The notes beneath the pieces are model-generated. The model was not told the origin of the DNA and ran no database searches. It saw only the letters and a list, made by a program, of their open reading frames with translations. This document shows, one piece after another, positions 9,714-55,875 of a stretch of DNA of 64,000 nt. Position 1 is the stretch's first letter. Each line of letters opens with the position of its first letter. The stretch covers positions 186,001-250,000 of the IMG/VR virus record IMGVR_UViG_3300005537_000001. The stretch is one strand, 5' to 3'. The position numbers and the translations under genes are program-made.

Positions 9714-9759
9714 CTTCACCCATTTAACATAATGGTGTCATTTAACATAATGTGAAAAG

Positions 9760-9787
9760 TGTACTTTCGGTCAGGTCATGATATAAT
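9760..9787 (+). promoter_or_regulatory. early (sigma70-type) promoter
   Basis: TGTACT-N16-TATAAT, preceded by two ATTTAACATAA boxes. Confidence 0.75.
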
Positions 9788-9793
9788 ACCTAC

Positions 9794-10114
9794 ATGATGA
9801 AGACTCGGAAGCGACGTTCAGACCGTATGCACCTCATATACGCTCTGACGAACATGGCAACCAACGAAAAGTATGTAGGCATGGCGGTTTGCATCGATCG
9901 CTCCGGTAAGGAAACACTCGCCGCCCGCTGGTGCCGACACGTGGGTCGAGCGAAGCATCAGAACAAAAACTGGAGCTTGTGCAAGTCGATTCGAAAGCAC
10001 GGACCCCAAGCTTTCTCACAGGAAATTATCGAGTTCGTTCGCGGCAAAGCCGAAGCGCACGCTCGCGAAACTGAAATCAAGAAGACCGGAAAATACGCTC
10101 TCAACACGGCGTGA
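9794..10114 (+). CDS. GIY-YIG-like endonuclease (Seg-like, minimal)
   Basis: LIYALTN...YVG...RW..H...F...IIE...A...E. Confidence 0.7.
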   Translation: MMKTRKRRSDRMHLIYALTNMATNEKYVGMAVCIDRSGKETLAARWCRHVGRAKHQNKNWSLCKSIRKHGPQAFSQEIIEFVRGKAEAHARETEIKKTGKYALNTA

Positions 10115-10126
10115 TGGAGATTCCCG

Positions 10127-10453
10127 ATGTGCTATTCCCGAAACGCGATGATTGAAAATTTCGAAAAGATGGTCAACTATGCCCATCAAGCTGATCCAAC
10201 TGGCCAGCGATTTCAGCAGTTCGCTAAAGATCCTCTTCCTCCCTGGGCGGTGGATCTTCAGGAAACTCTGGAAGCAGACTCCTCCACGGCGATCGAATTT
10301 TTCCAGCTCGCTCAAAACGATTGTCCCCAATGCGGTGGCTTTGGCTACACGATGGAGACCAACGGCGAGGATGGGGAGACGATGGTTGGTTGCTTCCGCT
10401 GTTGGGTTGCCCATCAGGAACGCAGCATTCCGACTCTCGTGGACGCCGTATGA
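10127..10453 (+). CDS. hypothetical protein with CxxC...CxxC zinc ribbon
   Basis: CPQCGG...CFRC; GGAG RBS. Confidence 0.65.
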   Translation: MCYSRNAMIENFEKMVNYAHQADPTGQRFQQFAKDPLPPWAVDLQETLEADSSTAIEFFQLAQNDCPQCGGFGYTMETNGEDGETMVGCFRCWVAHQERSIPTLVDAV

Positions 10454-10668
10454 TGCAGCTTCTTCACCTCGATCCTACAAAGCGATCGGTTTACTTCATC
10501 ACCGACATCGGCGAGGATTTGATTGCGTCAGCCTCCGATGGAACCGAGCTGCCGCTACCGCGCTACGGCGTTTGGCGGCGCGATGTTGGCGTGGTGGAAG
10601 CTGGTGAGGACATCGCGTTTCTTCAGGAAAAGTACAACGTTCCCAACTCTCAGGTGCACGTGCTATGA
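10450..10668 (+). CDS. hypothetical protein
   Basis: ATGA-coupled start at 10450, shorter than the track ORF. Confidence 0.6.
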   Translation: MMQLLHLDPTKRSVYFITDIGEDLIASASDGTELPLPRYGVWRRDVGVVEAGEDIAFLQEKYNVPNSQVHVL

Positions 10669-11030
10669 AAGCCCAGCTCGTTAAACTTCCTCCTGGCCGT
10701 CGTAAATTCGGCAAGTATCCGTGCAACGACGTTGACAGCTGTGGAAATGCGTGGGGAATCCCAACGTTAAACCAAGCGTATATAGATGGATACAACACTG
10801 GTGCCAATTGGAAGGATTCCTACGATCCAGGCGGACCTTTTACACATAGTTGGAGTGAGTACTACGAGCGCGTCCACCCCGAGGACTGGCAGGACCTTAA
10901 AGCTTATTGCGACGCCACCATAGAAAATTACCAGGAATGGCATCGAGGCTTCAAGGATGCTCGTAAGGGCATTCCTCCACTGCTACCCGAACTGAATCTT
11001 GATAAAATCGCAATCTTGGGGTACAACTAA
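10665..11030 (+). CDS. hypothetical protein
   Basis: Coupled ORF. Confidence 0.65.
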   Translation: MKAQLVKLPPGRRKFGKYPCNDVDSCGNAWGIPTLNQAYIDGYNTGANWKDSYDPGGPFTHSWSEYYERVHPEDWQDLKAYCDATIENYQEWHRGFKDARKGIPPLLPELNLDKIAILGYN

Positions 11031-11368
11031 TGAGTGAGCGAGAAGAATTTACGCAAGCTCTCGCGGATATCATTCGTGAGATGCGGAGATGGACGGCCCC
11101 GTACGGGATAATTGTTGGGATGCACGCTGAAGGTCGAGGCAAGGTTCGCACGATAACCTTCGGAGTTGCTCGACTTCTTGACGCAACAGTAAAGGTCTAC
11201 AGCTCCAGCTACATCGTTCTGGAATCTCAGGGTCCGATGGCCCAGTTCGGAAGTCCCATCACGTTTCGAACACCTCGAGATGCAGTTCTTCCAGAGCGAG
11301 AATCAGCAGCTGCCCAACTTCTCGATTTCATCAAGAAGAATTGGGTTTTCGACGACGCCCGGTACTAA
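11030..11368 (+). CDS. hypothetical protein
   Basis: TAATG coupling. Confidence 0.65.
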   Translation: MSEREEFTQALADIIREMRRWTAPYGIIVGMHAEGRGKVRTITFGVARLLDATVKVYSSSYIVLESQGPMAQFGSPITFRTPRDAVLPERESAAAQLLDFIKKNWVFDDARY

Positions 11369-11377
11369 GAGGAAATC

Positions 11378-11536
11378 ATGAACACCAGATTTTTGCTAGA
11401 TGAAGCTGAAAATCAGGATACCTTCGAACGCTTCCAAAAGCGCCGCAAGCTTGACGATGAAAGCTCTCGCGACCGCAAAAACTCGCGAAAGAAGTTCAGC
11501 CATCGGCCTCAGCAACGTGAACATGACAAAGTCTGA
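11378..11536 (+). CDS. small charged hypothetical protein (52 aa, absent from track)
   Basis: GAGG RBS; MNTRFLLDEAENQDTFERFQKRRK... Confidence 0.6.
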   Translation: MNTRFLLDEAENQDTFERFQKRRKLDDESSRDRKNSRKKFSHRPQQREHDKV

Positions 11537-12098
11537 TAAGCCCAAGGCTAAAAGATGGGTTCGGCTTCGGACGATGTCGCTTGAGCATGGACTTGCGTAT
11601 CTCAACGAGCCGCGCCAAGAGCGCAAAATCCGTGACAACTGGGTTGAGAGCACCAGCCAAAGCGCCAAGACGCGGTTGAAGATGTTCAAGAATGGGCAGA
11701 TAAGGTGCGTGAGCTGCGGGCTCGAAGGAAGCCACTGGCACATCGAGCGGGCTATCAACGATCTGGTGATGCCGTTCAGCATCAACCTTTATGGGCTGGT
11801 TCCAATTAGCGTCGGCGACATCAATAAGCCGGATGAAATAAAGTATACATGGGATGAGGTCATGCTTACGCACGATCATATTCTTCCGCGTTCTCTTGGA
11901 GGGTCCAACAACATCGCAAACGCCCAGTGCATGTGCGAGCCCTGTAACAACAAGAAGGCCAACTTTGTAGGTTTGTCCGAGCTGCTGCGAATCGCGTGCC
12001 ATTCAGATCCGATGGCTATTCACAAGCTCAATTCACCCGAAACAGATACGAAAAATTTGAAGTCAACGATCGCGCGGGCCAGAGCTGAGCTTCGATAA
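11523..12098 (+). CDS. HNH endonuclease
   Basis: CVSC...LTHDHILPRSLGGSNNIANAQCMCEPCNNKK; start moved to ATG 11523. Confidence 0.85.
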   Translation: MTKSDKPKAKRWVRLRTMSLEHGLAYLNEPRQERKIRDNWVESTSQSAKTRLKMFKNGQIRCVSCGLEGSHWHIERAINDLVMPFSINLYGLVPISVGDINKPDEIKYTWDEVMLTHDHILPRSLGGSNNIANAQCMCEPCNNKKANFVGLSELLRIACHSDPMAIHKLNSPETDTKNLKSTIARARAELR

Positions 12099-12272
12099 CA
12101 TGAATAAAATCGACCTGATGAGAGAAAATAAGCGCTTAAGATCTCAACTCAAGAAAATTAAAGCGGAATTAGCTAGGATTACGTCAGATCGTGATGCCAA
12201 AACAAAGCGCATGTGGCAGCTTGCGCATGAGTTAGATTGTCTCAAAACCGGTGAACACGATCAGTGGTGAGA

Positions 12273-12536
12273 TTATAACGCCGGAAATATCGACATCGCG
12301 GCTTGAATGGCAGTGAACAGGCGATCTAGATCTTCCTTCAAAATCAACTGGTTTGTTCCAATGAGGATAAGCTTTTCAGTCTTGAGATCTCCAACCAGCT
12401 CCTGGTATTCGGATTGAGAAAGCTGTCCAGCCTTGAATTGATTTGTAATCGTTACAGCTTCCGCCGCGATGGCTCCAGCTTCATCCCCCACTCCAACGAT
12501 GCTGCCCAGCTTGTTTAGGATATCTGACACGTTCAT
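12273..12536 (-). CDS. hypothetical protein
   Basis: Coupled downstream of the lipoprotein gene. Confidence 0.7.
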   Translation of the reverse strand: MNVSDILNKLGSIVGVGDEAGAIAAEAVTITNQFKAGQLSQSEYQELVGDLKTEKLILIGTNQLILKEDLDRLFTAIQAAMSIFPAL

Positions 12537-12943
12537 GGTTTTCCTCCAATTGCCTTCTGGATTGTCGTTGCCGCGCGGAGAAGAATCTGCATCTTGTCAT
12601 CACAGTAAAATGAGCTTACCGAATTTACCGACGCGTAGCGCTTGTTGAGCTCACTTGTCAGCTGATGAAGATTTGCGGTCAGTGCCGCGGTATCTTGATT
12701 TCCGTAAATGCCTTGAGAATATAGAGCGAGTTCGAAAGCTTGGTTGTTGATATCTTCTGCCGCAGTTTTCATGAACGCTTGATCATCGCATCTACCCTCA
12801 TCGACCGCTATCGTGTAGCGGAGGTGGGTGATCTTGTCATATTCTGAACCGTTAAATGAAGCTACGTTCAAGCTCGCTATCTTGCCGACTAAGGAACAGC
12901 CAGATAGACAGAAAAGGAGAGAGACCAGGAGAAGTTTCTTCAT
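12533..12943 (-). CDS. lipoprotein of unknown function
   Basis: MKK plus hydrophobic stretch plus lipobox LSGC; TAAATA at 12967-12972 on the minus strand. Confidence 0.75.
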   Translation of the reverse strand: MKKLLLVSLLFCLSGCSLVGKIASLNVASFNGSEYDKITHLRYTIAVDEGRCDDQAFMKTAAEDINNQAFELALYSQGIYGNQDTAALTANLHQLTSELNKRYASVNSVSSFYCDDKMQILLRAATTIQKAIGGKP

Positions 12944-13059
12944 TGAGATTCCTTGTAGGATAATGATATTTATTATGTTAAATTGAGACCAGAGGAGAAT
13001 CCGAGAGCAGATCGATTATTGTTAAATGAAAATAACCGTCAGTTATGTTAAATGAACGT

Positions 13060-13088
13060 TGTACTTGCTCAGGTTGATAGATTACAAT
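13060..13088 (+). promoter_or_regulatory. early promoter
   Basis: TGTACT-N17-TACAAT with ATTTAACATAA-type boxes upstream. Confidence 0.65.
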
Positions 13089-13122
13089 GTCTTCGTTGTT
13101 TGAACTACTGGAGATCGCTGAA

Positions 13123-14085
13123 GTGTCTAACGTTGCTCAACTCTCCCTGGATGGTCGGTCCAACAAATGGGTCGCTATCTTCGCAGGAAAGATTCTCGCC
13201 TCATCCCCCAACAAGGAATACGTCGTCAACAACATCCGAGCTGGTCGCTGCACCAAAGCGAATCAAGTACGCGTAACGGACGTCAAGGAAATCGGTGAAA
13301 CCGAAACCGTGACCAACGCGGTCGGCAAGGAAATCCAGCAGAAAGTGGACAAATTCGGAATCAACGAGCGGTTCGACTTCATGGAGGACTTCGTCTCCAT
13401 GGTCGCGGACCGAACCTCTCCTTCTCTTCTCGTAACCGGCGAGGGCGGTCTCGGCAAGACCTTCACGGTCAATAAAGCCCTTCGAACCAACAAGCTTCAG
13501 AAACTCGATCTTGAGGAGCTCACCGTTGGAGCTACCATCGACGACCACAAGTTCTACACGGTGGTCAAGGGGTACTCCACGGCAAAGGGCCTCTATCGGA
13601 CCCTCTGGGAAAATCGCAACCGACTGGTGGTCTTCGATGACTGCGACAGCGTCCTCCGCGATCCGGTCGCCCTCAACATCCTCAAGGGCGCTCTCGACTC
13701 CTACGACAAGCGCATCATCTCCTGGAACGCGGAATCCTTCGGAGACGACGATCTTCCCCGCTCCTTCGAGTTCAAGGGTGGAGTCATCTTCATCTCGAAC
13801 CTCCCAATCTTCAAGATCGACCAGGCGGTCCGCTCACGTTGCATCAGCGTGGACCTCTGCATGACCACGGCTCAGAAAATCGAGCGCATGGAAATGATCA
13901 TCAAGGGAGACGAGTTTCTCCCTGAGGTGGACATGAAAACCAAGCGCCACGCTCTGGACTTCCTCGAGAAGATGAAGGACGAAGCACGCGAGCTCTCCCT
14001 TCGAACCCTCATCGCGGTCACCAAGGTGGCTGCACGAGGTGGAGAATGGAAGCGTCGAGCCGAATATCTCCTCACGGCGGTTTAA
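13123..14085 (+). CDS. AAA+ ATPase, paralog of the 2357 ATPase domain
   Basis: GEGGLGKT, VVFDDCD, FISN, AVRSR. GTG start with GGAG RBS chosen because ATG 13087 overlaps the -10 box. Confidence 0.8.
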   Translation: MSNVAQLSLDGRSNKWVAIFAGKILASSPNKEYVVNNIRAGRCTKANQVRVTDVKEIGETETVTNAVGKEIQQKVDKFGINERFDFMEDFVSMVADRTSPSLLVTGEGGLGKTFTVNKALRTNKLQKLDLEELTVGATIDDHKFYTVVKGYSTAKGLYRTLWENRNRLVVFDDCDSVLRDPVALNILKGALDSYDKRIISWNAESFGDDDLPRSFEFKGGVIFISNLPIFKIDQAVRSRCISVDLCMTTAQKIERMEMIIKGDEFLPEVDMKTKRHALDFLEKMKDEARELSLRTLIAVTKVAARGGEWKRRAEYLLTAV

Positions 14086-14107
14086 CGGATACCACGGAGT
14101 TCGGACC

Positions 14108-14740
14108 ATGGCCACATCACGAAAAAAGCAGGAGCTGTACGACCAAGTATACACTCCCCGGGTCCAGCTGAAGGAAGCAATTCGGCTCCTTCAGCTGGCA
14201 GATCCGGATGACGCTCTGGATTACGACGAAAAAATAAAATGGCGTTCTGATCGAGACGCCATCGTCAAGGACGTCGTTTATGGGAGAAACGCACCCAAGA
14301 AAAAACCAACCCCACAAGCCAAAATCCAGCACCCATCGCTCGTCGAATACGTCAGCCGGATAAACTCTGGTCGCGTCGACAAGCTGGCGGTTAGGAGTCA
14401 GGATCTTACCCGAAACGACATCAACGTGATCGACGTGCAGATCGAAACCGATATGGCTTTGGTCGTCAACGGCACCAAGGCCAACAAGGTGTTCATGCAG
14501 AAAGTCATCAACGAGCTGGGTGCCTTGAAGCGGATGATGATCGAAACCGGCGGGAAGAGCTTCGATCGCCTCGCCCTGAAGGACTACCGCGATTTTCCAG
14601 ATGAGTGGAAAAAATTTCTCAGCGGTCCAGCGAGCGCCATCAACAAGATAAATCCGAGCCGTCAAGCTCGATTTTGGACTGGTGCGAGTTCGGAAGTCCG
14701 CACCGCCATCATGCAATCATCTCTTGGGAGAATAACATGA
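14108..14740 (+). CDS. hypothetical protein
   Basis: GGAG RBS before ATG 14108. Confidence 0.7.
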   Translation: MATSRKKQELYDQVYTPRVQLKEAIRLLQLADPDDALDYDEKIKWRSDRDAIVKDVVYGRNAPKKKPTPQAKIQHPSLVEYVSRINSGRVDKLAVRSQDLTRNDINVIDVQIETDMALVVNGTKANKVFMQKVINELGALKRMMIETGGKSFDRLALKDYRDFPDEWKKFLSGPASAINKINPSRQARFWTGASSEVRTAIMQSSLGRIT

Positions 14741-14988
14741 GTTCCATGATCGAGATACCCGAGTTTCGGCTGCCCTTCATTCCGCTCTACATGCTGCTCA
14801 TCGAGCTGACAGACGGGGACGTGCAGCTGGCCAAGTCTGAAAATGGTAAAGGTCCGGTGGTCGCCGTTGAAGGTAACCAATATCTCCTCCGCGAGATGGG
14901 TGACCGACTGCTCACCAAGAAGCTGATCATCGGCTACCAGCTGGTCAAGACTCTGACATATCCAACTAGAGAGGCTCCGGCGTTATGA
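14737..14988 (+). CDS. hypothetical protein
   Basis: GGAG RBS; ATGA coupling. Confidence 0.6.
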   Translation: MSSMIEIPEFRLPFIPLYMLLIELTDGDVQLAKSENGKGPVVAVEGNQYLLREMGDRLLTKKLIIGYQLVKTLTYPTREAPAL

Positions 14989-15139
14989 CTCGAAAACAGA
15001 TGCAAAAGCGCAGGGCAGCAATCGTAACCGAGCTGTGCAAACTGTCCCGCAACGGCTGGAGGGATGCAAAACCTTGCGACTACCAACCGCTTGAAGCTGA
15101 ACTTCGAACATTGGAACCCAAGCTTAGGAGAAATTCGTA

Positions 15140-15325
15140 ATGTACACGTTGAGGATCGAGTCCACGATTAAGGAAGTTGGACCATTTCATCTTCCCAAGG
15201 ACACCTACAATCTCGACGGAGCCGTCAAGGCAGCCGAGCGCTACAAATCTCGAGTGTGGGTGCTCAACGCGAAGGGTGAAACCGTTGCGAGGTGGGATGG
15301 TCTTGGCAGATGGAAAACGCCATGA
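15140..15325 (+). CDS. hypothetical protein
   Basis: AGGAG RBS; TAATG coupling. Confidence 0.6.
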   Translation: MYTLRIESTIKEVGPFHLPKDTYNLDGAVKAAERYKSRVWVLNAKGETVARWDGLGRWKTP

Positions 15326-15789
15326 AGTATCAAGCTGGGGAATGCTCCTGCAAGGAGTGCAAGTCGGCGTGCAGCAACAAGCCTGGCTGGTTCTCACCTG
15401 CTCAGATAAAACCCCTCGCCAAGAAGCTTGGACTTACCGTTCAGGAGCTGTTTAAGCAGCACCTCCAGATCGACTGGTGGGATCGCTATCCCAAGAACGT
15501 GTTCGTGTTATCTCCGCGTCAAACCCGCGGTACAGGTGGCACGATGTTTCCGGCAAATCCAAAGGGTGAGTGTCATTGGTTCAAGAATGGGAAATGTTCT
15601 ATTCACGAGCTCGGAAAACCAATAGAGTGCCAGCTGCTTGGTCACTCCGAGGCAGAGCCGAAAATTAGCAATCACGAACGTGCTATGAAAACTTGGGACA
15701 ATCCCAAAGCTCAACAGATGATTCGTGATCTCTACGGGAAGGAACCAGAAGCTGAAGAATACAGCATGTTCGAATCATTCACATGGTGA
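15322..15789 (+). CDS. YkgJ-like Cys-cluster (Zn/Fe-S) protein
   Basis: CSCKECKSAC...ECHWF..GKCSIH...KPIEC. Confidence 0.65.
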   Translation: MKYQAGECSCKECKSACSNKPGWFSPAQIKPLAKKLGLTVQELFKQHLQIDWWDRYPKNVFVLSPRQTRGTGGTMFPANPKGECHWFKNGKCSIHELGKPIECQLLGHSEAEPKISNHERAMKTWDNPKAQQMIRDLYGKEPEAEEYSMFESFTW

Positions 15790-16088
15790 GTTATGGCTGC
15801 AAGAATTGAGAAGGACGGAAAATTCTTCCGCAAACGCCGCGGCATCCTTGTGGAAATTCCAGGTGAATGGGTTGGCAAAGTTACCCACCCCCAAACGATT
15901 CGAAAGCGACCATCGAAGCGTGGACAAGGTCGCCACTTCCTTGTAAAAGCAGCACGATGATCCAATAGATCCATACACATACTTCTGCAGATTTGATCCC
16001 AGCGCACCTGTTATGTTAAATGCCTCAACCGGTGCTCCGGCTGCGTGTAAAACACATCGACCAGGTGTCGGGCTGAGGTGAAGATTAG

Positions 16089-16117
16089 TGTACATTCGTC
16101 AGGTTATGTGGTAGAAT
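16089..16117 (+). promoter_or_regulatory. early promoter
   Basis: TGTACA-N17-TAGAAT with TG extension. Confidence 0.75.
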
Positions 16118-16148
16118 AGCCTTACGAATTGAATAACAGGAGATTTAG

Positions 16149-16826
16149 ATGGCCGGTATGTTCAAAAAGGTGAATGTTGAAGTCAAGACCGAACCCAAGA
16201 AAAAGGGTAAGGAAAAGATTCAGCTGAAGATTCCTGGACTCCAGCAGCTTACCCTCCTTGATGCCCTCATCAAGCAGGCCACCGCGATGCAGGCCACCCT
16301 CAAGGCCGAAGCCAACACCATCGGCTTCGAAAAATTCGTGAGCCTCGCTGGACAAAGCGAACGTCCCTCCAGCTTCGAAGGTCTCGACGGTTACGCGACG
16401 GCCTCAGTCGAGGTTCGAAAGCGCAGCTCCGGTTCGGTTCTTACCGACGAAGAAGTTGACGTTCTCAAGAAAGCCGGTATAGAAGCGCAAACGAAGGTGA
16501 CCCAACCCCATCTGTTCGCGATCAACCCGAAATACGCGACCAATGAATCCCTCCTGGGCAAGGTGGAAAAAGCCCTCTCGAAGATCGTGCCGGATGACTT
16601 CATCTCCCAGCAGCTGGAAGTTTCCCGCAAGGTCGTCTCGGACGAGATGCTCGACACGGCTTTCCGAAAAGGTGCAGACGAACAAGTCCTCGCCATTCTG
16701 ACCACGATGGCGCTCAAGCCCAAGCTGAGCGAGTCCTACAACATGGACAACCTCATCAAGGACGCCCTCGAGATCATGCAGCCCACCAAGAAAGCCGCTC
16801 CTACCAAGAAGAGCGTCAAGGCCTAA
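16149..16826 (+). CDS. hypothetical basic protein
   Basis: AGGAG RBS; strongly biased codons. Confidence 0.75.
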   Translation: MAGMFKKVNVEVKTEPKKKGKEKIQLKIPGLQQLTLLDALIKQATAMQATLKAEANTIGFEKFVSLAGQSERPSSFEGLDGYATASVEVRKRSSGSVLTDEEVDVLKKAGIEAQTKVTQPHLFAINPKYATNESLLGKVEKALSKIVPDDFISQQLEVSRKVVSDEMLDTAFRKGADEQVLAILTTMALKPKLSESYNMDNLIKDALEIMQPTKKAAPTKKSVKA

Positions 16827-16834
16827 CGTTCTCC

Positions 16835-17470
16835 ATGACAACTTCGTACACAAAGTACCAGTATCTTTGGCCTCCGAGGCCCGAGCAAAAGATCGCTCCT
16901 TCGTCTCTCACGTTCTACGAAAATCGTAAATGGTGGGCCCAAACGAAGAAAAATGGAACTTGCACCTTGATCTTCTCGAATGGGCGCGAGGTCATCTTCA
17001 AGACGCGTCACAATGACGATCACAAGATGTGGACGCCTCAAGCTGAACACATCGAGTTCTTCCGAAGCGGAACCAAGAGTTTCAGTTCGGACAGCAATTG
17101 GAACGTCTACTGCGCCGAGCTTCTCCACTCGAAGGTCTCCAACGGTCCCAAGAATGAGCTGTACATCTTCGACATTCTCGTGAAGGATGGCGTCTATCTT
17201 ACCGGAGAAACCTTCGCGTATCGCCAGCACGTCCTCCACGGTCTGTGGAATGGGAAGCACGAGGGTGACCAAGTTCGAATAACCCCACAGATTACCGTTG
17301 CAACGTGCATCGACAGTGGATTCGCGGAACGCTTCAACAACCTCAAGCCGGAAGATGAGGGATTGGTGCTGAAGGATCCAAACGCGAAGCTGAAATCCTG
17401 CTTCAAGGCAAGCTCGAATGCAGCTTGGATGGTAAAGTGCCGAATCCCCAACAAAAACTACAGCTTTTGA
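16835..17470 (+). CDS. ATP-dependent ligase-type nucleotidyltransferase (adenylation domain only)
   Basis: Motif I KKNG, III CAEL, IIIa YIFDIL, IV DEGLVLK, V WMVKCR; no OB domain. Confidence 0.75.
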   Translation: MTTSYTKYQYLWPPRPEQKIAPSSLTFYENRKWWAQTKKNGTCTLIFSNGREVIFKTRHNDDHKMWTPQAEHIEFFRSGTKSFSSDSNWNVYCAELLHSKVSNGPKNELYIFDILVKDGVYLTGETFAYRQHVLHGLWNGKHEGDQVRITPQITVATCIDSGFAERFNNLKPEDEGLVLKDPNAKLKSCFKASSNAAWMVKCRIPNKNYSF

Positions 17471-17473
17471 CCA

Positions 17474-18220
17474 ATGCCCGAAGGTCCTGAAGTTCGACTG
17501 CAAGCTGATCTTCTCCAGCGCGTTGTTGGAAGCACGATTCACGGCGCGAGAGTTGTCAGCGGCCGGTATCTACGAAAGCCGATTACCGGACTCGATGAAC
17601 TCGCTGGCAGCAGGATCACGGCCATCAACAATCATGGCAAGCTGATTTACTTCGCGCTCGATGGCAAGCGCTACATCCACTCAACCCTTGGCATGAGCGG
17701 TTCGTGGGAAGCTGAAAATTTGAAGCACACCCGCATCTCGCTAACCCTCTCAAAATCTACCATTCACTATCACGATCCTCGAAATTTCGGGACGCTAAAG
17801 ATAGTTTCGGCAGCTGAACACCAAGAGAAACTTTCTCTGCTTGGACCAGATTTTAGCAAGCCGCTCGATGAATCGGTAACGACCGAAATCGAACGTCGGC
17901 TCAGCTCGTACGGTAGCGGCTGCATCGCCCAGTCACTTCTCGATCAGCGAATCTTCTGCGGCATCGGAAATTATCTGCGGGCCGACGCTCTGTATCTCGC
18001 GAAAATCAACCCGCACGCTCTAAAGCTTTCCAAGCGGAGCTTGAAAAATCTCGTCTTACGCTGCATCGAGCTTTCAAGCTTGGCGTACCTCGAGAGGGAA
18101 TCGTACGAATTCATCATCTACAAGCGGCGAATTTCCAAGCTTGGGAACCCGATAGTTTCAGAGCTGATTGGCCCACGCCGAATATGGTGGTGCCCGGTTG
18201 AGCAGGTCAATTTAACATAA
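17474..18220 (+). CDS. mutM: Fpg/Nei-family DNA glycosylase/AP lyase
   Basis: N-terminal MPEGPEV, HGK, LGMSG, H2TH GIGNYLRADALY. Confidence 0.9.
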   Translation: MPEGPEVRLQADLLQRVVGSTIHGARVVSGRYLRKPITGLDELAGSRITAINNHGKLIYFALDGKRYIHSTLGMSGSWEAENLKHTRISLTLSKSTIHYHDPRNFGTLKIVSAAEHQEKLSLLGPDFSKPLDESVTTEIERRLSSYGSGCIAQSLLDQRIFCGIGNYLRADALYLAKINPHALKLSKRSLKNLVLRCIELSSLAYLERESYEFIIYKRRISKLGNPIVSELIGPRRIWWCPVEQVNLT

Positions 18221-18239
18221 TGTGACCTGAAAATAAGTG

Positions 18240-18268
18240 TTTACTTTTGGTAGATCACGTGATAGAAT
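18240..18268 (+). promoter_or_regulatory. early promoter
   Basis: GTTTACT-N17-TAGAAT; ATTTAACATAA box at 18210-18220. Confidence 0.8.
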
Positions 18269-18308
18269 AGATCTGTAAGTTGATAAACCCGCTGCAAAGG
18301 AGATTGAA

Positions 18309-18686
18309 ATGAATTTGACTTTGACCCAGTTGATCGCGAAGTACAACGAATTGGCCACCGCCGCCGGCGTTGCAACTCGCAAGGGCTTCGAAAGCAAGGC
18401 GAAGGCCGAAGCTGCAATCGCGGCTCTGTCGAAGACGACCACGAAGACTGCGAAAGCGTCGGGCGCCACCCTCCGAGTCCGCAAGGCGGCAGCGGTTCGT
18501 GAGAAAGGTCCTCGCGGTTTCAAGTTCGGCCCGGTGTGGCTGGCTTCGATTGCCGCCGGTAAGGGCGTCGCGTTGAAGCCCGCGAACATCAAGAAGGTGC
18601 TCGAGACGGCAGAAGCCAAGGGTGTGACGGTGACGAAGGATCTGACGCAGGCGGAAATCGTAGCGTTGATCGCGAAAGCGATCTAA
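18309..18686 (+). CDS. Lys/Ala-rich histone-like putative DNA-binding protein
   Basis: AAGGAG RBS, very basic composition, own promoter and terminator; paralog at 55299. Confidence 0.7.
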   Translation: MNLTLTQLIAKYNELATAAGVATRKGFESKAKAEAAIAALSKTTTKTAKASGATLRVRKAAAVREKGPRGFKFGPVWLASIAAGKGVALKPANIKKVLETAEAKGVTVTKDLTQAEIVALIAKAI

Positions 18687-18723
18687 TCGGCGCAAACTTC
18701 TCGAAAGAGAAGAGGCCCGGTCT

Positions 18724-18758
18724 GCGGGCCCCTACGATAGAGGGGCCCGCTTCTTTTT
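18724..18758 (+). terminator. intrinsic terminator
   Basis: GCGGGCCCCT-N7-AGGGGCCCGC followed by TTCTTTTT. Confidence 0.85.
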
Positions 18759-32927: not shown

Positions 32928-33054
32928 ATGTTCCTCCTTATCGCTAAGATCTACGTTGTGATTTGGGTGTTGGCATTAGCTCTCGAGCTGGGAAGTAATG
33001 ACCCAGTGGAGCCCTGGAGCTAGGTTAGATACGACCATTTAACAATAATTCAGG

Positions 33055-33083
33055 TGTACATCTGAACGGACCTGTGATACAAT
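33055..33083 (+). promoter_or_regulatory. early promoter
   Basis: TGTACA-N17-TACAAT; ATTTAACAATAA box upstream. Confidence 0.8.
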
Positions 33084-33113: not shown

Positions 33114-35168
33114 ATGGTAAAGACTATCGAGCAGAAGTTCAAAAAGCTTACAGAAGTAGAACATGTCTTAAAGCGTCCAGGTCGTTACATCGGTGCGATC
33201 ACACCCCATACCGAAGAAACCTTCGTATATGCGGAGCCGACGTTGGGTGAAGGCGATGAGGATGAGGTATTGAAATCACCTGACGATGAGCTAGATGATG
33301 GGGATGGGGATGCTGAAGAATTCATCGAAAAGCGGATGATTAAAAAGTCCGTCACCTACAACCCTGGTTTCATCAAGCTTTTCGACGAGATCATCTCCAA
33401 CTCGGTAGATTTCTCCAAGACCCCGGAGGGCAAGCATCTCGATATCGTTCGAGTCGAGGTTGATCAAGAGAAAGGAGAGATCAGCGTTTACGACAACGGT
33501 GGAATACCGGTCGTGAAGCACAAGGAATACAACCAGTGGGTTCCTGAGATGATCTTCGAGCTTCGAGCTGGCAGCAACTTTGACGATGAAGATCAAGCGA
33601 TGCTCACCGGCCAAAATGGAGAGGGCGCCGCCCTAACCAACATCTTCTCAACTAAATTCGTCGTTGAAACGTGCGACGCCGTTAAGAAGTTCAAGATGAT
33701 CTTTGAGGAAAATTCTCAGGATCGCCGCAACCCCAAGATTCAAGATGCGGAGGGAAGCAAGGGCTACACCCGCATTACCTACTACCCCGACTTTGAGAAG
33801 CTGGGCTGTAAATTTACTGACGACAACATGGCGATGCTGCTCAAGCGCGTAGTTGACGTAGCTGGAGTCAACTCCCACCTCAAGGTCTACTGGAATGGTG
33901 ATCGTATTCCCACCCGCTCCTTCAAGGACTACGTTGAGCTCTACGTTGAGCAGCAGGAAAATGGAGCTCCCGGCGAATTTGCCTACGACGAGACTGAGAA
34001 TTGGAAGGTAGCTGTTTCCGCCTCAACTGACGGCTTCCAGCAAGTATCCTTCGTGAATGGTACCCACACGAAGGTCGGCGGCACCCACATCCTCTACGCG
34101 GGCATGCAGATTTGGGAGCACATTCGCGAGCACATCAAGAAGAAGCACAAGGTTGACATCAAGCCTTCCGAGCTTCGACAGCACATGACGCTCTACATCG
34201 ACTGCAACATCGTTAACCCACGCTACAACTCTCAAACGAAAGAAGAGCTGATGACCGAGGTCAAGGACTACAAGACCTCGTGGGAAGTTCCTGATAAGAT
34301 GATCAACAAGATCGTCAAGTCGTCGATCATTCAGTCGATTCTTGATTGGGCAGAAGCAAAGCAGAAGATGGAGGAGCTACGAGATCTGCGCAAGCTCAAC
34401 AAGGACGTTGTTGGTGCCAACCCATCACGAGTTGAAAAATTCTGCGACGCTCTTGAGAAGCACCAGCGTCACAAGTGCATTCTCTTCCTAGCGGAAGGAG
34501 ACTCAGCAGCCAAGTCGCTCTTCGCAGCATCGGATCATCAATTTATCGGTACCTTCCCTCTCAAGGGCAAGCCGCTTAACGTGCGTGAGAAGGAAATCGC
34601 GCGAGTGCTTGGACTCGACAAGAAGAAGGAGGGCAAGACAGAACCCAACGAGATCCAAAAGATTCTCACCATCATTGGACTGCAGATCGGACATGAGGTG
34701 AAGTCGCTCAACGAGCTTCGCTTCGGTAAGGTTGCCTTCGCCACCGACGCCGACGTTGACGGAGCCCACATCGCTGGGCTGCTCATGAATCTCTTCGATC
34801 ACTTCTGGCCCGAGCTCTTCAAGCTTGGATTCATCCACATCCTCCGCACCCCAGTCGTGAAGGTGTTCGTCAAGAATCAGATCCACATCGAATTCTTCAC
34901 CGAGCGTGAGTTCAAGGAGTGGGTCAACAAGGACGGTCAAAAGCTGAAGGGCTGGACACACCGTTACTTCAAAGGATTGGGTACCTCGAAGACACCGGAT
35001 TTCATTCCATACATGACTAACCTCAATAAGTATCTTTTTCAGGTAGCCATGGAGGACACTCCAGACAAGCAGGCAATTGATCTCGCCTTCAATGGAGAAC
35101 GAGCGGACGACCGCAAGGTATGGCTTGAGACTCCGGCAGATAATTTCGAAGATTTCATCATAGCGTGA
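33114..35168 (+). CDS. 39: type IIA DNA topoisomerase ATPase/TOPRIM subunit (T4 gp39+gp60 fused type)
   Basis: EHVLKRPGRYIG, DEIISNSVD, DNGGIP, GQNGEGA, AEGDSA, PLKGK, TDADVDG, YFKGLGT. Confidence 0.95.
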   Translation: MVKTIEQKFKKLTEVEHVLKRPGRYIGAITPHTEETFVYAEPTLGEGDEDEVLKSPDDELDDGDGDAEEFIEKRMIKKSVTYNPGFIKLFDEIISNSVDFSKTPEGKHLDIVRVEVDQEKGEISVYDNGGIPVVKHKEYNQWVPEMIFELRAGSNFDDEDQAMLTGQNGEGAALTNIFSTKFVVETCDAVKKFKMIFEENSQDRRNPKIQDAEGSKGYTRITYYPDFEKLGCKFTDDNMAMLLKRVVDVAGVNSHLKVYWNGDRIPTRSFKDYVELYVEQQENGAPGEFAYDETENWKVAVSASTDGFQQVSFVNGTHTKVGGTHILYAGMQIWEHIREHIKKKHKVDIKPSELRQHMTLYIDCNIVNPRYNSQTKEELMTEVKDYKTSWEVPDKMINKIVKSSIIQSILDWAEAKQKMEELRDLRKLNKDVVGANPSRVEKFCDALEKHQRHKCILFLAEGDSAAKSLFAASDHQFIGTFPLKGKPLNVREKEIARVLGLDKKKEGKTEPNEIQKILTIIGLQIGHEVKSLNELRFGKVAFATDADVDGAHIAGLLMNLFDHFWPELFKLGFIHILRTPVVKVFVKNQIHIEFFTEREFKEWVNKDGQKLKGWTHRYFKGLGTSKTPDFIPYMTNLNKYLFQVAMEDTPDKQAIDLAFNGERADDRKVWLETPADNFEDFIIA

Positions 35169-49114: not shown

Positions 49115-49128
49115 CCGGATTAATTGAC

Positions 49129-50740: not shown

Positions 50741-50764
50741 GCTTAGTAACGGCGCCTGCGCAAA

Positions 50765-52382: not shown

Positions 52383-52468
52383 CTGCGCCTATTTTAACCC
52401 ATCTGGAAACGTAAGTACAACCTGGACCTGACACCTTCTCCGGATGCTCCCCGGATTTTTGGGGCTGG

Positions 52469-52885: not shown

Positions 52886-52927
52886 GCGCTAATTGTAACA
52901 CCAGGCGAGCTGGTAGTAAATAGACGC

Positions 52928-53638
52928 ATGCTGATACAAGATCTACAATCAATTCTAACCGAAGCTCAGGCTCGGCTGTACGCCGGCTGGGTTGGAGCTC
53001 GATCCCACAACTCTTCGGCTATTCACATTTTTATTCCAGATCATAATCATCCGGGTAATAGCCCTAGCAGCCCAATATATGTTTATCCAGGCTTACCATT
53101 TTCAGCTAGTAACGGTGCTCCAGGTACAACAGCTCCAGCTGGAACGAAGGTGTCAATCGGTGGTAAAACAAGCATCAAGGAATTTATCAATTCTGACTAT
53201 GGGATTCGGATGTACGGTCCGTTCATCAAGTTGATTAAATCCCAAAAGATTACAGATCAACAGCTACTTGATTTTGGCGCCAACATCTTAGCGCAAGTTA
53301 TCGCGAGCGGCGCCGACGAGGATAAATATTTTTCGTTTAAAGCCAAGCTACCGACCCAAGATGATATCATTCGGGGAATTCTCAAGATTTACAAGGATGA
53401 GCCCAAGGAGGTTAAGAGATTTATCTCCAACGCCAAGAAGCTTGGGTACAAGATTCCAGACGACGTGCTTGGAGCGATCTCAAAGTCGATCACCCACACT
53501 CGCAAGACTGAGGAGGCGGCGCGTCATGATAGCGCCGTCGCGGCGGCAAAGTCAGCTTTAGATAGAGCGCACCAGCGCCACGAGGATGCGGTTGCACGGC
53601 GTAACGCCTTCTTGAAGAAACACGGATTAGAAAGCTAA
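52928..53638 (+). CDS. late hypothetical protein with shared helical module
   Basis: TAAATA at 52917-52922, 5 nt before the ATG; MLIQDLQSILTEA; KLGYKIPDDVLGAISKS. Confidence 0.75.
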   Translation: MLIQDLQSILTEAQARLYAGWVGARSHNSSAIHIFIPDHNHPGNSPSSPIYVYPGLPFSASNGAPGTTAPAGTKVSIGGKTSIKEFINSDYGIRMYGPFIKLIKSQKITDQQLLDFGANILAQVIASGADEDKYFSFKAKLPTQDDIIRGILKIYKDEPKEVKRFISNAKKLGYKIPDDVLGAISKSITHTRKTEEAARHDSAVAAAKSALDRAHQRHEDAVARRNAFLKKHGLES

Positions 53639-55239
53639 GGTTTCTTTTTCTTCCGAGCCGCGGCGCGCTCAACTCCGCCGGCGTAGACTTCCTGAGCTCG
53701 CGCGCGGCTGTCGAACGGCCCGTACATGTACCACTCGACTACGATGTACCACTTTGCCCAAATCCTGAACGGCTTAACGTTCATCGGTTTTTCTCCGGCG
53801 CTCGGCGGCTCTCCGAAGTTCAGTCTGATAACCAGCTTCAGCCGCTCCCTTGTTAGTCCACGGTCCGTACTGCACACCGTTAACTATGACCCACCAGCCA
53901 GTTCGAAGCGCGAAGGGACCGTGGTTGTTCGCAACCTCTCTCAGCTTCTTTAGGCGATCATACTCATCCTGGCTGATGTGCTCGATGCTGTCCTTCGGCT
54001 TCAGGCAGATGTGACAGCGGCTTTTATCCCGCGCCGTCGCCAAGAAGACGTGGCGGAGGTCCTCGTCTGGCCATGCATCCTTTTCCATGGCTAAATTCCA
54101 ATCAGCTCTAGTTCGACAATTTCGGCGCGATCGTCGAACCACATCTTTTGCGGCGAGGCGAGGTGTTCTTCTGCCGCCTCAAGCGTGACGTAGGCGGCTC
54201 TCGCGCTGATGTTTCCGATAGACTTATTTTCTCCGACGATAACGAAAATCTTCATCGCGTTTCTCCTTAGTTAGACCATCAACCCGTACTGGTGTAGAAA
54301 GAAGGCTCCGTCTGGTTCTTCATTGATCATCTCCATCACCTCGGCAGCGAGCTGGCGCTGGTGTGGCTCCAGCTTCCACCAGAGCACCGCCAGCTGGCGC
54401 AGGTACTTCTGCCTGGTCCGCTGGGTCTTGGCGGCCCGGGCCAGTCGAAAGCAAGTCATGAAGGCAGGGAGGTACGTCATGGCGGGTCACTCGTCGGTTA
54501 CCTCGTCGCACGCCTGCGCGATCGTGTTCAGCCAGCTGCTAACCGCGTCGAGCGCGATTCCTCCCTCCTGAACCGGATGATCCGCCATCCCCTGCAGGAA
54601 CAAGCTGATCATGTAGCCAACGTCCTTGGGACTGACGTCGATGCCGAGCGCGTTTGCCGCGGCGGTTACGTCATCGACGAGTGAGGCGATAGTTTTGATT
54701 TCTCGCGTCATAGCAGCATCATCCTGTAGCCGTGGCTACGTCTTCAACCTCGTCAACGATGTCGGCGACAAGCAGCAACCACGTCGTAACGTAGTTGATT
54801 TCAGGTCCGTCGCTCTCATCATCTGGTCCATCGGCAACTCCCTGCAGGAACAAGCTGATGATGAACGCCGCCTCTCGTGGGCTGATAATTACGCCAACCT
54901 GGGTTGAGGCTAGAGCCGCGTTGTGAACAAGCGCTTCAATCTTGTGCATGGCGTTCACCCGGTGTTGTTCGATACCCACATCCGGGCGATCAGCAGATCA
55001 AGCTGGTGCAGGTCGCTGTCGAGTGACGCAAGCTCAGCTTGAGCGCTTCCATGGCAGCTGCCACCCTTGTGGATCTTGGTGATGTCGCCGACAACTCGAT
55101 CGCGCTCGATTCGCGCGTGGCGCAGCAGGCAGAGCAGCTCAACTCGGTTGTCGATGACGAACGGTGTTTGAAGCTTCAGCCCGATGATCCGGCTGCCTGC
55201 CGTCATCGTTGAAGTTGTATTGATCGGCGGGATTGACAT
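53635..55239 (-). other. run of small early-type CDS (53635-53784, 53774-54088, 54271-54480, 54487-54711, 54719-54958, 54955-55239)
   Basis: Coupled minus-strand ORFs including two paralog pairs. Confidence 0.6.
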
Positions 55240-55261
55240 GACACATTCTCCCTTTGGGCTC

Positions 55262-55285
55262 GGGCAGAGTGTCAGTCCTCTGCCC
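55262..55285 (-). terminator. stem-loop after the histone-like gene
   Basis: GGGCAGAG-N8-CTCTGCCC with no clear U-tract. Confidence 0.45.
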
Positions 55286-55298
55286 TACCCAGGCACCA

Positions 55299-55697
55299 TC
55301 ACAGCGCCGGCTTGATGGCCTCCGCGATGTCGCGTGGGGTGGTATCCTTTCGGTTGGGTACCTGGACTCCCTTGGCCTTCGCCAGCGATAGGAGTTTCGG
55401 TAGGTTGGCTGGCCGTACAGCCACACCCTTGCCCTCGGCTACCGACTTGAGGAATACCGCTCCGTAGCGGAATCCGCGGGGCCCGGCGCGGTGGACCGAC
55501 TTCTTGACCGTCTTGATCCGCTTCGTTACCGCTTCGGCGGTATCCTGATCGACTCGAATTCCCGACGGTCGATTTTGGATGAAGGAGGTCAGCTTCGACA
55601 CCGACTGAATCTTGTGCTGCCGGATCAAGGCTCGAGCCTCGTCCGCGTCCTTAAGACCAAGTTCAGCCGCCTTTTCGATCAGTGCATTCATCTTCAT
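55299..55697 (-). CDS. basic putative DNA-binding protein, paralog of 18309
   Basis: AGPRGFRYGAVFLKSVAEGKGVAVRPANL matches the 18309 protein; AAAGGAG RBS. Confidence 0.75.
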   Translation of the reverse strand: MKMNALIEKAAELGLKDADEARALIRQHKIQSVSKLTSFIQNRPSGIRVDQDTAEAVTKRIKTVKKSVHRAGPRGFRYGAVFLKSVAEGKGVAVRPANLPKLLSLAKAKGVQVPNRKDTTPRDIAEAIKPAL

Positions 55698-55875
55698 GGT
55701 CGTCTCCTTTGCTGTGTTGCGTTATGTTCCTGATGGAGCTATTCCATCAGGTAGGGATATCATACAACCTGTCATCAATCAGTTATATAGTCCTTTAGGC
55801 CAGGTTCATGTAGTCCCAGGACTACAAGGTTTACAAATTATGTTAAATGAAGATCTTCCTATTATGTTAAATCGG

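What the first reader, a model, noticed from the sequence alone, without database searches (positions are those of the whole stretch)
9722..55872. Recurrent 11-bp ATTTAACATAA box beside early promoters
Exact copies in either orientation occur at 9722, 9740, 12973, 13043, 16011, 18210, 55838 and 55862. ATTTAACAATAA variants occur near 13016 and 33037. All are intergenic or at gene ends, often paired, and mostly 6-70 bp upstream of a -35 box. Both histone-like paralogs have them. This suggests a phage regulon operator or activator site, or a nucleoid-organising site.
Basis: partly seen in the sequence, partly recalled or inferred. Interest (0 to 1): 0.6.

Follow-up and report, generated by a model that had tools for sequence, protein, structure and literature searches.

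The report
XerD-arm boxes upstream of phage promoters
A jumbo phage carries about two dozen near-perfect copies of an 11-base box just upstream of the promoters of its DNA-replication genes, and the box is letter for letter the half of the bacterial dif site that binds the host recombinase XerD, so the phage may use XerD as a promoter factor.

Summary
ATTTAACATAA occurs 8 times in the window (expected 0.04) and 16 times in the 368-kb phage genome, plus 6 copies of a 12-mer variant. All copies are intergenic.

The boxes belong to one promoter subclass, TGTACTTTC..TCAGGTT..TAnAAT. This subclass drives a UvrD-like helicase, DNA ligase, topoisomerase II, an AAA protein, a GIY-YIG nuclease and two paralogous small proteins. 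The promoter-proximal box is centred near -49, or one helical turn further at -59. A second box usually lies 16-25 bp upstream.

A 54%-identical relative (G004) has 28 boxes of the form A[T/G]TT[A/T]ACATAA, partly at orthologous promoters.

There is no XerC arm beside it and no phage recombinase. An unrelated ~50-kb phage lineage places the same box at -49/-50 of consensus sigma-70 promoters and shares only the helicase with this phage.

My best reading (about 0.4) is that host XerD is recruited without recombination. The main rival (about 0.35) is a phage-encoded factor that co-evolves with its site, because other relatives carry GTTACA-type repeats at the same positions. Nothing is shown biochemically.

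The parts
9722..9732 (+). Distal box, exact ATTTAACATAA, centred about -66 of the 9760 promoter
9740..9750 (+). Proximal box, exact, ending 9 nt before the -35 and centred about -48
9760..9787 (+). Boxed-class promoter: TGTACT, spacer containing TCAGGT, extended TATAAT
9794..10114 (+). GIY-YIG homing-endonuclease-like gene downstream; its G004 ortholog also has two boxes
12973..12983 (-). Exact box in the divergent intergenic region, 30 nt upstream of the minus-strand lipoprotein gene
13016..13027 (-). 12-mer variant box ATTTAACAATAA
13043..13053 (-). Exact box, inverted relative to the plus-strand promoter, 6 nt upstream of its -35
13060..13088 (+). Boxed-class promoter (TGTACT, CAGGTT in spacer, TACAAT), conserved in 17 related loci
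13123..14085 (+). AAA/clamp-loader-like protein (phrog_1250). The likely start is GTG 13123, because ATG 13087 overlaps the -10 and relatives align from residue 9-14 onward
12533..12943 (-). Predicted lipoprotein (lipobox LSGC) downstream of the minus-strand boxes
16011..16021 (-). Single exact box, inverted, 67 nt upstream of the -35 at 16089
16089..16117 (+). Boxed-class promoter (TGTACA, TCAGGTT, TAGAAT) before a 225-aa gene of unknown function at 16149-16826
18210..18220 (+). Single exact box overlapping the end of the upstream ORF, ending 19 nt before the -35 and centred about -59, flanked by a 7-bp inverted repeat
18240..18268 (+). Promoter (TTTACT, 17-nt spacer, TG-extended TAGAAT)
18309..18686 (+). 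P0001, a 125-aa Ala/Lys-rich protein and paralog of P0002; function unknown, possible SAP/HeH-like N-terminus
33037..33048 (+). Single 12-mer variant box ending 6 nt before the -35, centred about -46.5
33055..33083 (+). Promoter (TGTACA, 17-nt spacer, TACAAT)
33114..35168 (+). DNA topoisomerase II large subunit; its G004 ortholog has a box 83 nt upstream
55838..55848 (-). Exact box, the downstream one of the pair before P0002
55862..55872 (-). Exact box directly after the stop of the HTH gene, 24 nt from its partner
55757..55787 (-). Candidate promoter for P0002 (weak -35, ACAGGTT in spacer, TATGAT); inferred by eye only
   Evidence: inference
55299..55697 (-). P0002, a 132-aa paralog of P0001; the single G004 homologue of the pair also has a box upstream

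Best explanation
Each box is a protein-binding site that belongs to a subclass of sigma-70-type phage promoters: T[GT]TAC[AT] at -35, TCAGGTT in the spacer, and an extended -10. This subclass transcribes the phage's DNA replication, repair and topology genes. The box acts from a fixed face of the helix. The promoter-proximal copy is centred at about -49, or one turn further at -59. A second copy usually lies 16-25 bp upstream, mostly in the same orientation as the promoter.

The box is the exact 11-bp XerD arm of the proteobacterial dif site, and the phage encodes no tyrosine recombinase. I therefore take the host recombinase XerD, bound as a monomer per box, as the most likely binder. No XerC arm is present, so no recombination is expected. 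XerD would work as an upstream activator or architectural factor for host RNA polymerase. Its inner, catalytic-domain side would face the -35.

Shown: the enrichment, the promoter association, the geometry, the conservation in a relative, and the sequence identity with the XerD arm. Inferred: that a protein binds, that it is XerD, and that the effect is activation.
For: Enrichment and sharpness. There are 16 exact copies and 2 one-mismatch copies genome-wide against about 0.1 expected.

Promoter subclass and geometry. Conservation is confined to the boxes, the -35, CAGGT and the -10, while the spacers vary. The proximal box is centred at -46.5 to -51 in 7 of 10 promoters and at -57.5 to -59 in 3 of 10. 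The association with CAGGT-spacer promoters has odds ratio 30.

Regulon. The downstream genes include a UvrD-like helicase, ATP-dependent ligase, topoisomerase II large subunit, an AAA protein and a GIY-YIG nuclease.

Conservation. G004 (358 kb, median 54% protein identity) has 28 boxes against 0 for the control pattern. Boxes lie upstream of its TGTAC promoters, including the orthologous helicase, GIY-YIG, topoisomerase II and g_289818 promoters.

XerD arm. The box equals TTATGTTAAAT, the arm found in E. coli, Yersinia, Pseudomonas, Aeromonas, Neisseria, Nitrosomonas, Ralstonia and others. The next base is T in 14 of 16 copies, as in dif. The conserved block has the same length as the arm.

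Variation pattern. The positions that vary among G000 and G004 boxes (2 and 5) are positions that also vary among natural XerD arms, for example the TTATGTAAAAT and TTATGTTAAGT types. Positions 3, 4 and 7-11 are fixed in both sets; position 6, fixed in the boxes, varies in a minority of natural arms.

XerD biochemistry. XerD alone binds dif or a half-site with KD about 10 nM, whereas XerC alone needs more than 100 nM (PMC2800217). XerD-only sites without recombination already exist in B. subtilis as XDS (Karaboja 2021, as cited in PMC11840125).

No phage recombinase. Pfam PF00589 and PF02899 give nothing in G000.

Independent lineage. G001-G003 (about 50 kb, 54-56% GC) place the same exact box at -49/-50 of TTGACA-N17-TATAAT promoters in 7 of 7 cases. 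They share only the helicase with G000 and G004 by BLASTP and by pair-profile HMMs. This favours a host-supplied binder.

Wider scan. In IMG/VR contigs with at least 40% GC, paired XerD arms occur in 16 (proteobacterial type) plus 6 (Firmicutes type) spacer-distinct groups, against 1 plus 1 for the reversed control patterns.
Against: No binding or expression data exist, and XerD is not known to act at promoters.

Other relatives (61-76% identical AAA protein) keep the same core promoter. At the same two distances from the -35 they carry GTTACA-type repeats, which are not XerD arms. This pattern is what a phage-encoded factor co-evolving with its site would produce.

The exactly conserved 12-mer variant has one extra base inside the arm. 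That should disturb a rigid XerD register.

Some boxes are inverted relative to the promoter (13043, 16011, several in G004).

Isolated relatives (XacN1, X1, Xoo-sp13, RsoM2USA, CM1) are enriched neither for the box nor for the Xanthomonas arm.

A MAG that holds a G001-like contig has a likely dif whose XerD arm differs from the box at one position, although the binning is uncertain.

Total counts of Firmicutes-type paired arms in IMG/VR do not exceed the control: 35 against 47 contigs.
Confidence: 0.4

Rival explanations
1. The box is the operator or activator site of a phage-encoded, sequence-specific DNA-binding protein that co-evolves with its site within this jumbo-phage clade. It would act like a middle-gene activator. 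The identity with the XerD arm would then be coincidental.
For: The relatives form a graded series at the same promoter positions: GTTACA[A/C]TTT in most, TTTACATAA and TTAACATAA in G004, and TTAACATAA in G000 and L312. The core promoter is conserved throughout. A one-base insertion variant is tolerated. Both orientations occur. L312 carries a further palindromic upstream motif, which suggests modular phage regulators. Phage-encoded activators of replication-gene promoters are common (established knowledge, for example T4 MotA).
Against: An exact 11-of-11 match, plus the following T, to one of the most conserved bacterial protein-binding sites is unlikely by chance. I estimate 1e-3 or less. 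The unrelated G001-G003 lineage uses the same exact box at the same position, yet no shared protein other than the helicase is detectable. The nearby HTH gene is absent from G004. No MotA-like gene is present. No candidate binder has been identified.
Confidence: 0.35
2. The boxes are themselves RNA-polymerase-binding elements. Each box contains a -35-like TTAACA and an overlapping -10-like CATAAT. A direct pair spaced 18-20 nt therefore forms an extra sigma-70 promoter, or an RNAP 'antenna', upstream of the main promoter.
For: The pair at 9724-9751 is the best sigma-70-like match in window 9000-19000, with 10 of 12 positions and a 16-nt spacer. Pair spacings of 18, 19 and 20 nt recur in G000, and 17-19 nt in G004. 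G004 and relative motifs TTTACA and GTTACA resemble the phage's own -35.
Against: Single boxes (18210, 33037, 16011, and all proximal boxes of G001-G003) cannot form such a promoter. Pairs spaced 24-43 nt exist. Most G004 boxes end in CATAAC and so lack the critical last T of a -10. The invariance of all 11 positions exceeds what -35 and -10 hexamers need.
Confidence: 0.1
3. XerD, or another protein, is bound for a non-transcriptional purpose. The options are an oriented roadblock or unloading site for host DNA translocases (FtsK, SMC complexes), a nucleoid or phage-chromosome organiser, or a sponge that titrates XerD away from host dif.
For: XerD on a half-site stops FtsK in an orientation-dependent way (PMC2800217). 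XerD at XDS sites unloads Smc-ScpAB (as cited in PMC11840125). Most boxes share the orientation of the mostly co-directional genes.
Against: These roles do not explain the restriction to one promoter subclass, the fixed -49/-59 positions, or the same position in G001-G003. Twenty-four sites in 368 kb, clustered at about 13 loci, make a poor array for genome-wide organisation.
Confidence: 0.07
4. The boxes are passengers of a duplicated or mobile promoter cassette and have no binder of their own.
For: Boxes and the CAGGT-type promoter travel together. Mobile promoter cassettes are known in T4-type phages (established knowledge).
Against: The sequence between boxes and promoter elements is not conserved and varies in length, while the boxes stay exact. 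Boxes persist at orthologous promoters in a relative with 54% protein identity.
Confidence: 0.03

Closest known systems
XerD-binding arm of the chromosomal dif site (XerCD/dif dimer resolution)
   Same: The 11-bp sequence TTATGTTAAAT is identical, including the first base of the central region. The length of the conserved block is the same. The positions that vary among phage boxes also vary among natural arms.
   Different: There is no XerC arm and no 6-bp central region followed by an inverted arm. There are many copies per genome, as direct repeats. They lie upstream of promoters in a lytic-type jumbo phage that has no recombinase. Recombination is not expected.
XDS sites of Bacillus subtilis (XerD-only sites that unload Smc-ScpAB; Karaboja et al. 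2021, as cited in PMC11840125)
   Same: Both are stand-alone XerD-type sites used without dimer resolution, and several copies occur per replicon.
   Different: XDS sites lie in the chromosomal terminus and act on SMC. Here the sites sit at fixed promoter positions in a phage, and XerD binding is not shown.
T4 middle promoters (MotA box with AsiA/MotA sigma appropriation)
   Same: Both are phage-specific sequence elements that mark promoters of DNA-replication genes and define a temporal regulon on host RNA polymerase.
   Different: The MotA box replaces the -35 at about -30. Here the -35 is kept and the box lies at -49/-59. No MotA homologue was found.
Monomeric activator sites such as the MarA/SoxS/Rob marbox
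   Same: Both are asymmetric sites, mostly in one orientation, at discrete positions one helical turn apart upstream of the -35.
   Different: The sequences are unrelated, no AraC-family protein has been identified, and this comparison rests on my own knowledge only.
UP elements (alpha-CTD binding, -40 to -60)
   Same: They share the position upstream of the -35 and the A+T richness.
   Different: UP elements are degenerate A/T tracts. The box is an exact 11-mer with an invariant C:G pair, and it also works at variable distances and sometimes inverted.
Host-factor-dependent phage promoters (IHF and Fis at lambda and Mu promoters)
   Same: The logic would be the same: a conserved host DNA-binding protein placed upstream of phage promoters.
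   Different: The factor would be a site-specific recombinase that is not known to regulate transcription.

Membership tests
dif / Xer recombination site | 11-bp XerD arm | tested here: met
   The box is the exact reverse complement of TTATGTTAAAT.
dif / Xer recombination site | XerC arm in inverted orientation across a 6-8 bp central region | tested here: not met
   Sequences 3' of the boxes are variable or are another box in direct orientation. The boxes are therefore not dif, cer or psi sites, and not an IMEX attP.
dif / Xer recombination site | A cognate tyrosine recombinase acts on it | not testable with these tools
   The phage encodes none. Host XerD binding needs an experiment.
XDS-type XerD-only sites | XerD occupancy without recombination | not testable with these tools
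   Only the sequence identity with the arm is shown.
XDS-type XerD-only sites | Location in the replication terminus and an effect on SMC | tested here: not met
   The sites are spread over about 13 promoter loci of a phage genome. An SMC effect is untestable here.
T4-type MotA-dependent middle promoter | MotA box at -30 replacing the -35, with MotA and AsiA genes present | tested here: not met
   The -35 is retained and the box lies at -49/-59. PF09114 found nothing in G000, but the control genomes were also silent, so absence of the gene is weakly supported.
UP element | A/T tract matching the UP consensus between -38 and -59 | tested here: inconclusive
   The position fits. The sequence does not match the UP consensus as I recall it: the box has an invariant C and is exactly conserved. 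No UP scoring was run.
Upstream activator site (class I-like) | Discrete positions on one helical face upstream of the -35 | tested here: met
   Proximal boxes are centred at about -49 or -59 in G000 and at -49/-50 in G001 and G002. Transcription start sites are inferred from the -10 hexamers, not mapped.
Upstream activator site (class I-like) | A bound activator raises transcription | not testable with these tools
Sigma-70 promoter formed by a box pair | -35-like and -10-like hexamers 16-18 nt apart, conserved | tested here: inconclusive
   This holds for the three canonical pairs of G000 spaced 18-20 nt (at 9722, genome 51913 and genome 266010; the 18-nt pair at genome 74154 also gives a 16-nt spacer), for example TTAACA-16-CATAAT with 10 of 12 positions. 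It does not hold for single boxes, for wide pairs, or for most G004 boxes, which end in CATAAC.
Mobile promoter cassette | Homology extending through the whole cassette | tested here: not met
   Only the boxes and core promoter elements align.

The most novel reading that the evidence does not exclude
Host XerD is co-opted, without XerC and without recombination, as a promoter-proximal factor centred at about -49.5 by at least two unrelated phage lineages, to drive their replication genes. XerD is scarce, so the growing number of phage genome copies could titrate it. That would shut the regulon off with time and also starve the host dif site of XerD.
Probability: 0.35. Interest if true: 0.85.

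Novelty: new variant of a known kind. Interest (0 to 1): 0.62.

Why it matters
If XerD binds these boxes, a near-universal recombinase with one of the most conserved DNA sites in bacteria would gain a second role as a phage-exploited promoter factor. That would give a simple reason why a phage promoter set could work across many beta- and gamma-proteobacterial hosts. It would also add a second case of XerD-only sites beside the B. subtilis XDS.

The box equals the E. coli arm, so the idea can be tested directly in E. coli with reporters in wild-type and xerD-deleted strains.

If the binder is instead a phage protein, the finding still defines a clean replication-gene regulon. It has a conserved core promoter and rapidly turning-over upstream sites in an uncultivated jumbo-phage clade related to XacN1-like phages. 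That makes it useful material for studying how a regulator and its site co-evolve.

Tried and rejected
- **Close DNA relatives among isolated phages:** none found.
- **Known RNA family:** no Rfam match in the window.
- **General hairpin hypothesis:** flanking stems are only slightly above background (mean 2.5 against 1.5 bp), apart from a few long stems, so it was rejected as a general feature.
- **Covariation test in isolated relatives:** neither the box nor the Xanthomonas-type arm ATTTCGCATAA is enriched in XacN1, X1, Xoo-sp13, RsoM2USA or CM1. The boxes are therefore specific to a sub-lineage.
- **Queuovirinae phages with the same helicase family (MiCath, DoCa3):** no boxes.
- **Phage tyrosine recombinase or MotA:** none found.
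- **Shared DNA-binding protein between G000/G004 and G001/G002:** none detectable.
- **P0001/P0002 as binders:** no family match, a low-confidence fold (pLDDT 52) and only SAP/HeH-like hints. This was not pursued.
- **HTH protein at 55876:** absent from G004.
- **Exact GTTACA-N3-GTTACA pattern:** rare in the relatives' full records, so the relatives' motif is looser than that pattern.
- **Literature:** no paper in the held library describes this box as a phage promoter element. One search was wasted on an ambiguous term.
- **Protein-complex prediction (XerD with RNAP domains):** not run, because a negative result would be uninformative.

Full report
**Source.** The window is bases 186,001-250,000 of a single 368,054-bp virus record with direct terminal repeats (G000). 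It is rated complete and has 48% GC. Its topoisomerase II large subunit is 43-51% identical to those of Xanthomonas phages X1, BUDD, XacN1 and Xoo-sp13, Ralstonia phage RsoM2USA and Stenotrophomonas phage CM1. It is therefore an uncultivated jumbo phage of that broad group, probably with a beta- or gamma-proteobacterial host. Nearly all genes lie on the + strand (my own crude ORF-based gene calls).

**Observation.** Their expectations are 0.04 and 0.01. Genome-wide there are 16 exact 11-mers and only two one-mismatch copies, plus five exact 12-mers and one near copy. The motif is unusually sharp. All copies are intergenic or overlap the last codons of a gene. In called-intergenic DNA alone (66.5 kb, 45.6% GC), 13 copies stand against 0.04-0.09 expected.

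**Anatomy.**
- The genome has about 44 promoters of the type T[GT]TAC[AT]-N15-18-TAnAAT, often with TG before the -10. From my own knowledge, this -35 resembles that of T4 early promoters.
- Twelve of the 44 have a box within 90 nt upstream. Eight of those twelve also carry CAGGT in the spacer, typically as TGTACTTTC, 1-3 nt, TCAGGTT. Only 2 of 32 unboxed promoters do (odds ratio 30, p = 1e-4).
- An alignment of nine boxed promoters shows conservation confined to the boxes, the -35, CAGGT and the -10. The spacers between them vary in sequence and length. This argues against simple cassette duplication and for selection on the boxes.
- I took the -10 hexamer as -12 to -7. On that basis the promoter-proximal box is centred at -46.5 to -51 in seven promoters and at -57.5 to -59 in three. 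Distal boxes lie at -64 to -70, -76.5 and -83.
- Most boxes point the same way as the promoter. Those at 12973, 13016, 13043 and 16011 are inverted relative to the nearby + strand promoter.

**Regulon.** The genes behind boxed promoters are:
- a UvrD-like helicase;
- an ATP-dependent DNA ligase;
- the topoisomerase II large subunit;
- an AAA/clamp-loader-like protein (phrog_1250);
- a GIY-YIG endonuclease;
- the paralogs P0001 and P0002;
- several small proteins of unknown function.

This is a DNA-metabolism regulon. 'Early' is an inference from the sigma-70-like promoters, and delayed-early or middle timing is as likely.

**Identity of the box.** A full-text search for the 10-mer returned mainly papers on dif. 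The table in PMC2731167 shows that TTATGTTAAAT, the reverse complement of the box, is the XerD arm of dif in E. coli, Yersinia, Erwinia, Pseudomonas, Acinetobacter, Aeromonas, Shewanella, Vibrio, Neisseria, Nitrosomonas, Thiobacillus, Ralstonia and others. The same paper shows that this arm is the best-conserved part of dif.
- The base after the box is T in 14 of 16 copies, as in dif, where the central region follows. The conserved block is as long as the arm.
- No XerC arm follows any box. The neighbour is either variable sequence or another box in direct orientation. The boxes are therefore not recombination sites.
- The phage has no tyrosine recombinase domain, while the control genomes all gave matches.
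- Published biochemistry makes lone arms plausible binding sites. XerD alone binds dif or a half-site with KD about 10 nM, XerC alone needs more than 100 nM, and XerD on a half-site is an oriented block to FtsK (PMC2800217).
- XerD-only sites without dimer resolution are known in B. subtilis as XDS (Karaboja 2021, as cited in PMC11840125).

**Relatives.** A search with the AAA protein found 17 related viral loci at 46-76% identity. They fall into three patterns.
- The closest locus, L312, has G000-type boxes.
- G004 is a complete 358-kb phage with 54% GC. It shares 228 of 429 G000 proteins at a median 54% identity. It has 26 copies within one mismatch against 0 for the control pattern, and 28 copies of the core TT[A/T]ACATAA, in the form CCA[T/G]TT[A/T]ACATAA. 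These lie upstream of TGTAC promoters.
- In G004, the orthologs of the G000 helicase and GIY-YIG genes again have two boxes each. The topoisomerase II gene, the P0001/P0002 homologue and g_289818 are also boxed.
- The positions that vary among these boxes (2 and 5) also vary among natural XerD arms, for example the Methylobacillus type TTATGTAAAAT and the Rhodoferax type TTATGTTAAGT. Most fixed positions are fixed in natural arms too.
- The remaining relatives (L313, L314, L317-L325, L327) keep the core promoter almost unchanged. At 9-10 or 19-21 nt from the -35 they carry GTTACA-type repeats. These are not XerD arms.
- Isolated relatives are enriched neither for the box nor for the Xanthomonas-type arm.

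**An unrelated lineage with the same box.**
- A scan of IMG/VR for paired boxes found 102 contigs. Among them, G001-G003 (40-55 kb, 54-56% GC) have 3-5 exact boxes each, all on one strand, in the primase-polymerase/helicase region.
- In G001 and G002 the box ends 9-10 nt before a near-consensus TTGACA-N17-TATAAT promoter in 7 of 7 cases, so it is centred at -49/-50.
- These promoters have their own spacer motif, AGCGCT.
- By BLASTP and by G000-G004 pair profiles, the only protein these phages share with G000 and G004 is the UvrD-like helicase. Two phages with that helicase family but no boxes exist.
- The same exact site at the same promoter position in two lineages with no shared regulator is what a host-supplied binder predicts.

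**Wider scans.**
- Collapsed by spacer, paired proteobacterial-type arms form 57 groups in IMG/VR, 16 of them at 40% GC or more. The reversed control pattern gives 32 groups, 1 of them at 40% GC or more.
- Paired Firmicutes-type arms form 26 groups (6 at 40% GC or more), against 24 (1) for their control.
- This is suggestive for mid-GC contigs only. Total counts are dominated by A+T-rich repeats and by oversampled lineages.
- Some other contigs (L021, L024, L039) carry dense arrays of TTATGT[A/T]AA in both orientations that look like iterons or centromeres. I did not resolve what they are.
- A MAG that holds a G001-like contig has a probable dif whose XerD arm is TTATGTCAAAT, one base off the box. 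The binning is uncertain.

**Weighing the explanations.** I hold at about 0.85 that the box is a functional cis-regulatory protein-binding site of a replication-gene promoter class.
- For the binder, the exact arm identity is the strongest single datum. I estimate a chance match at 1e-3 or less. The variation pattern and the G001-G003 lineage add to it.
- Against XerD stand the GTTACA series in relatives, the conserved one-base insertion variant, the inverted copies and the lack of any precedent.
- I put host XerD at about 0.4 and a co-evolving phage factor at about 0.35.
- The rest goes to three readings: box pairs acting as promoters (the pair at 9724-9751 scores 10 of 12 as TTAACA-16-CATAAT, but G004 boxes mostly end in CATAAC and single boxes cannot do this), non-transcriptional XerD roles, and passive cassettes.
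- The direction of the effect (activation) is inferred from position only.

**Limits.**
- Gene calls outside the tool lists are my own.
- Transcription start sites are inferred.
- No expression or binding data could be obtained.
- The hosts are unknown.
- The IMG/VR comparison used one control pattern for each arm type.

Noticed in passing
G000 genome 289719-289749 (outside the window) and G004 161127-161160: A box sits in the loop of a perfect hairpin of 10 bp or more, upstream of the same ortholog in both phages. The two stems are entirely different in sequence (compensatory), and the loop has opposite orientation relative to the gene.
   Followed up: partly
window 13087-13125: The longest ORF of the AAA gene starts at an ATG inside its own -10 hexamer. 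Relatives and an upstream GGAG point to GTG 13123 as the real start.
   Followed up: partly
window 12533-12943 (-): A 136-aa predicted lipoprotein (signal peptide with lipobox LSGC) is transcribed divergently from the AAA gene, with three boxes on its strand upstream.
   Followed up: no
window 55876-56208 (-): A 110-aa HTH_Tnp_1/transposase-like helix-turn-helix protein ends 4 nt before a box pair. It has no homologue in G004, G001 or G002.
   Followed up: partly
window 18711-18750: A strong bidirectional terminator-like hairpin (9-10 bp, GC-rich, T-runs on both strands) lies after P0001, between convergent genes.
   Followed up: no
window 16835-17470 (+): A 211-aa ORF has a weak match to ATP-dependent DNA ligase (phrog_114, E = 1.5e-4), in addition to the full ligase elsewhere in the genome.
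   Followed up: no
L312 1200-1300 and 6930-7000: The closest relative carries another upstream motif, a near-palindrome GAACTGGTTA[A/T]CAGTT, at about -60 of the same promoter class. This suggests several regulators acting on one core promoter.
   Followed up: no
L024 860-1550, L039 7900-8470, L021 7570-8160, L350 (MAG contig C103): Dense arrays (10 or more copies in a few hundred bp, both orientations) of TTATGT[A/T]AA[A/G/C]-type motifs resemble iterons or centromere repeats in unrelated mid-GC viral or plasmid-like contigs.
   Followed up: partly
L023 and L047 (G001, G002), promoters at L023 875, 3107, 4953 and 5925: The boxed promoters of this lineage share their own spacer palindrome AGCGCT between the -35 and -10, analogous to TCAGGTT in G000.
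   Followed up: no
G004 8261, 247041, 322859 (+ strand): Several G004 boxes are inverted and directly abut a TGTAC -35 on the opposite strand. G000 does not show this second architecture.
   Followed up: no
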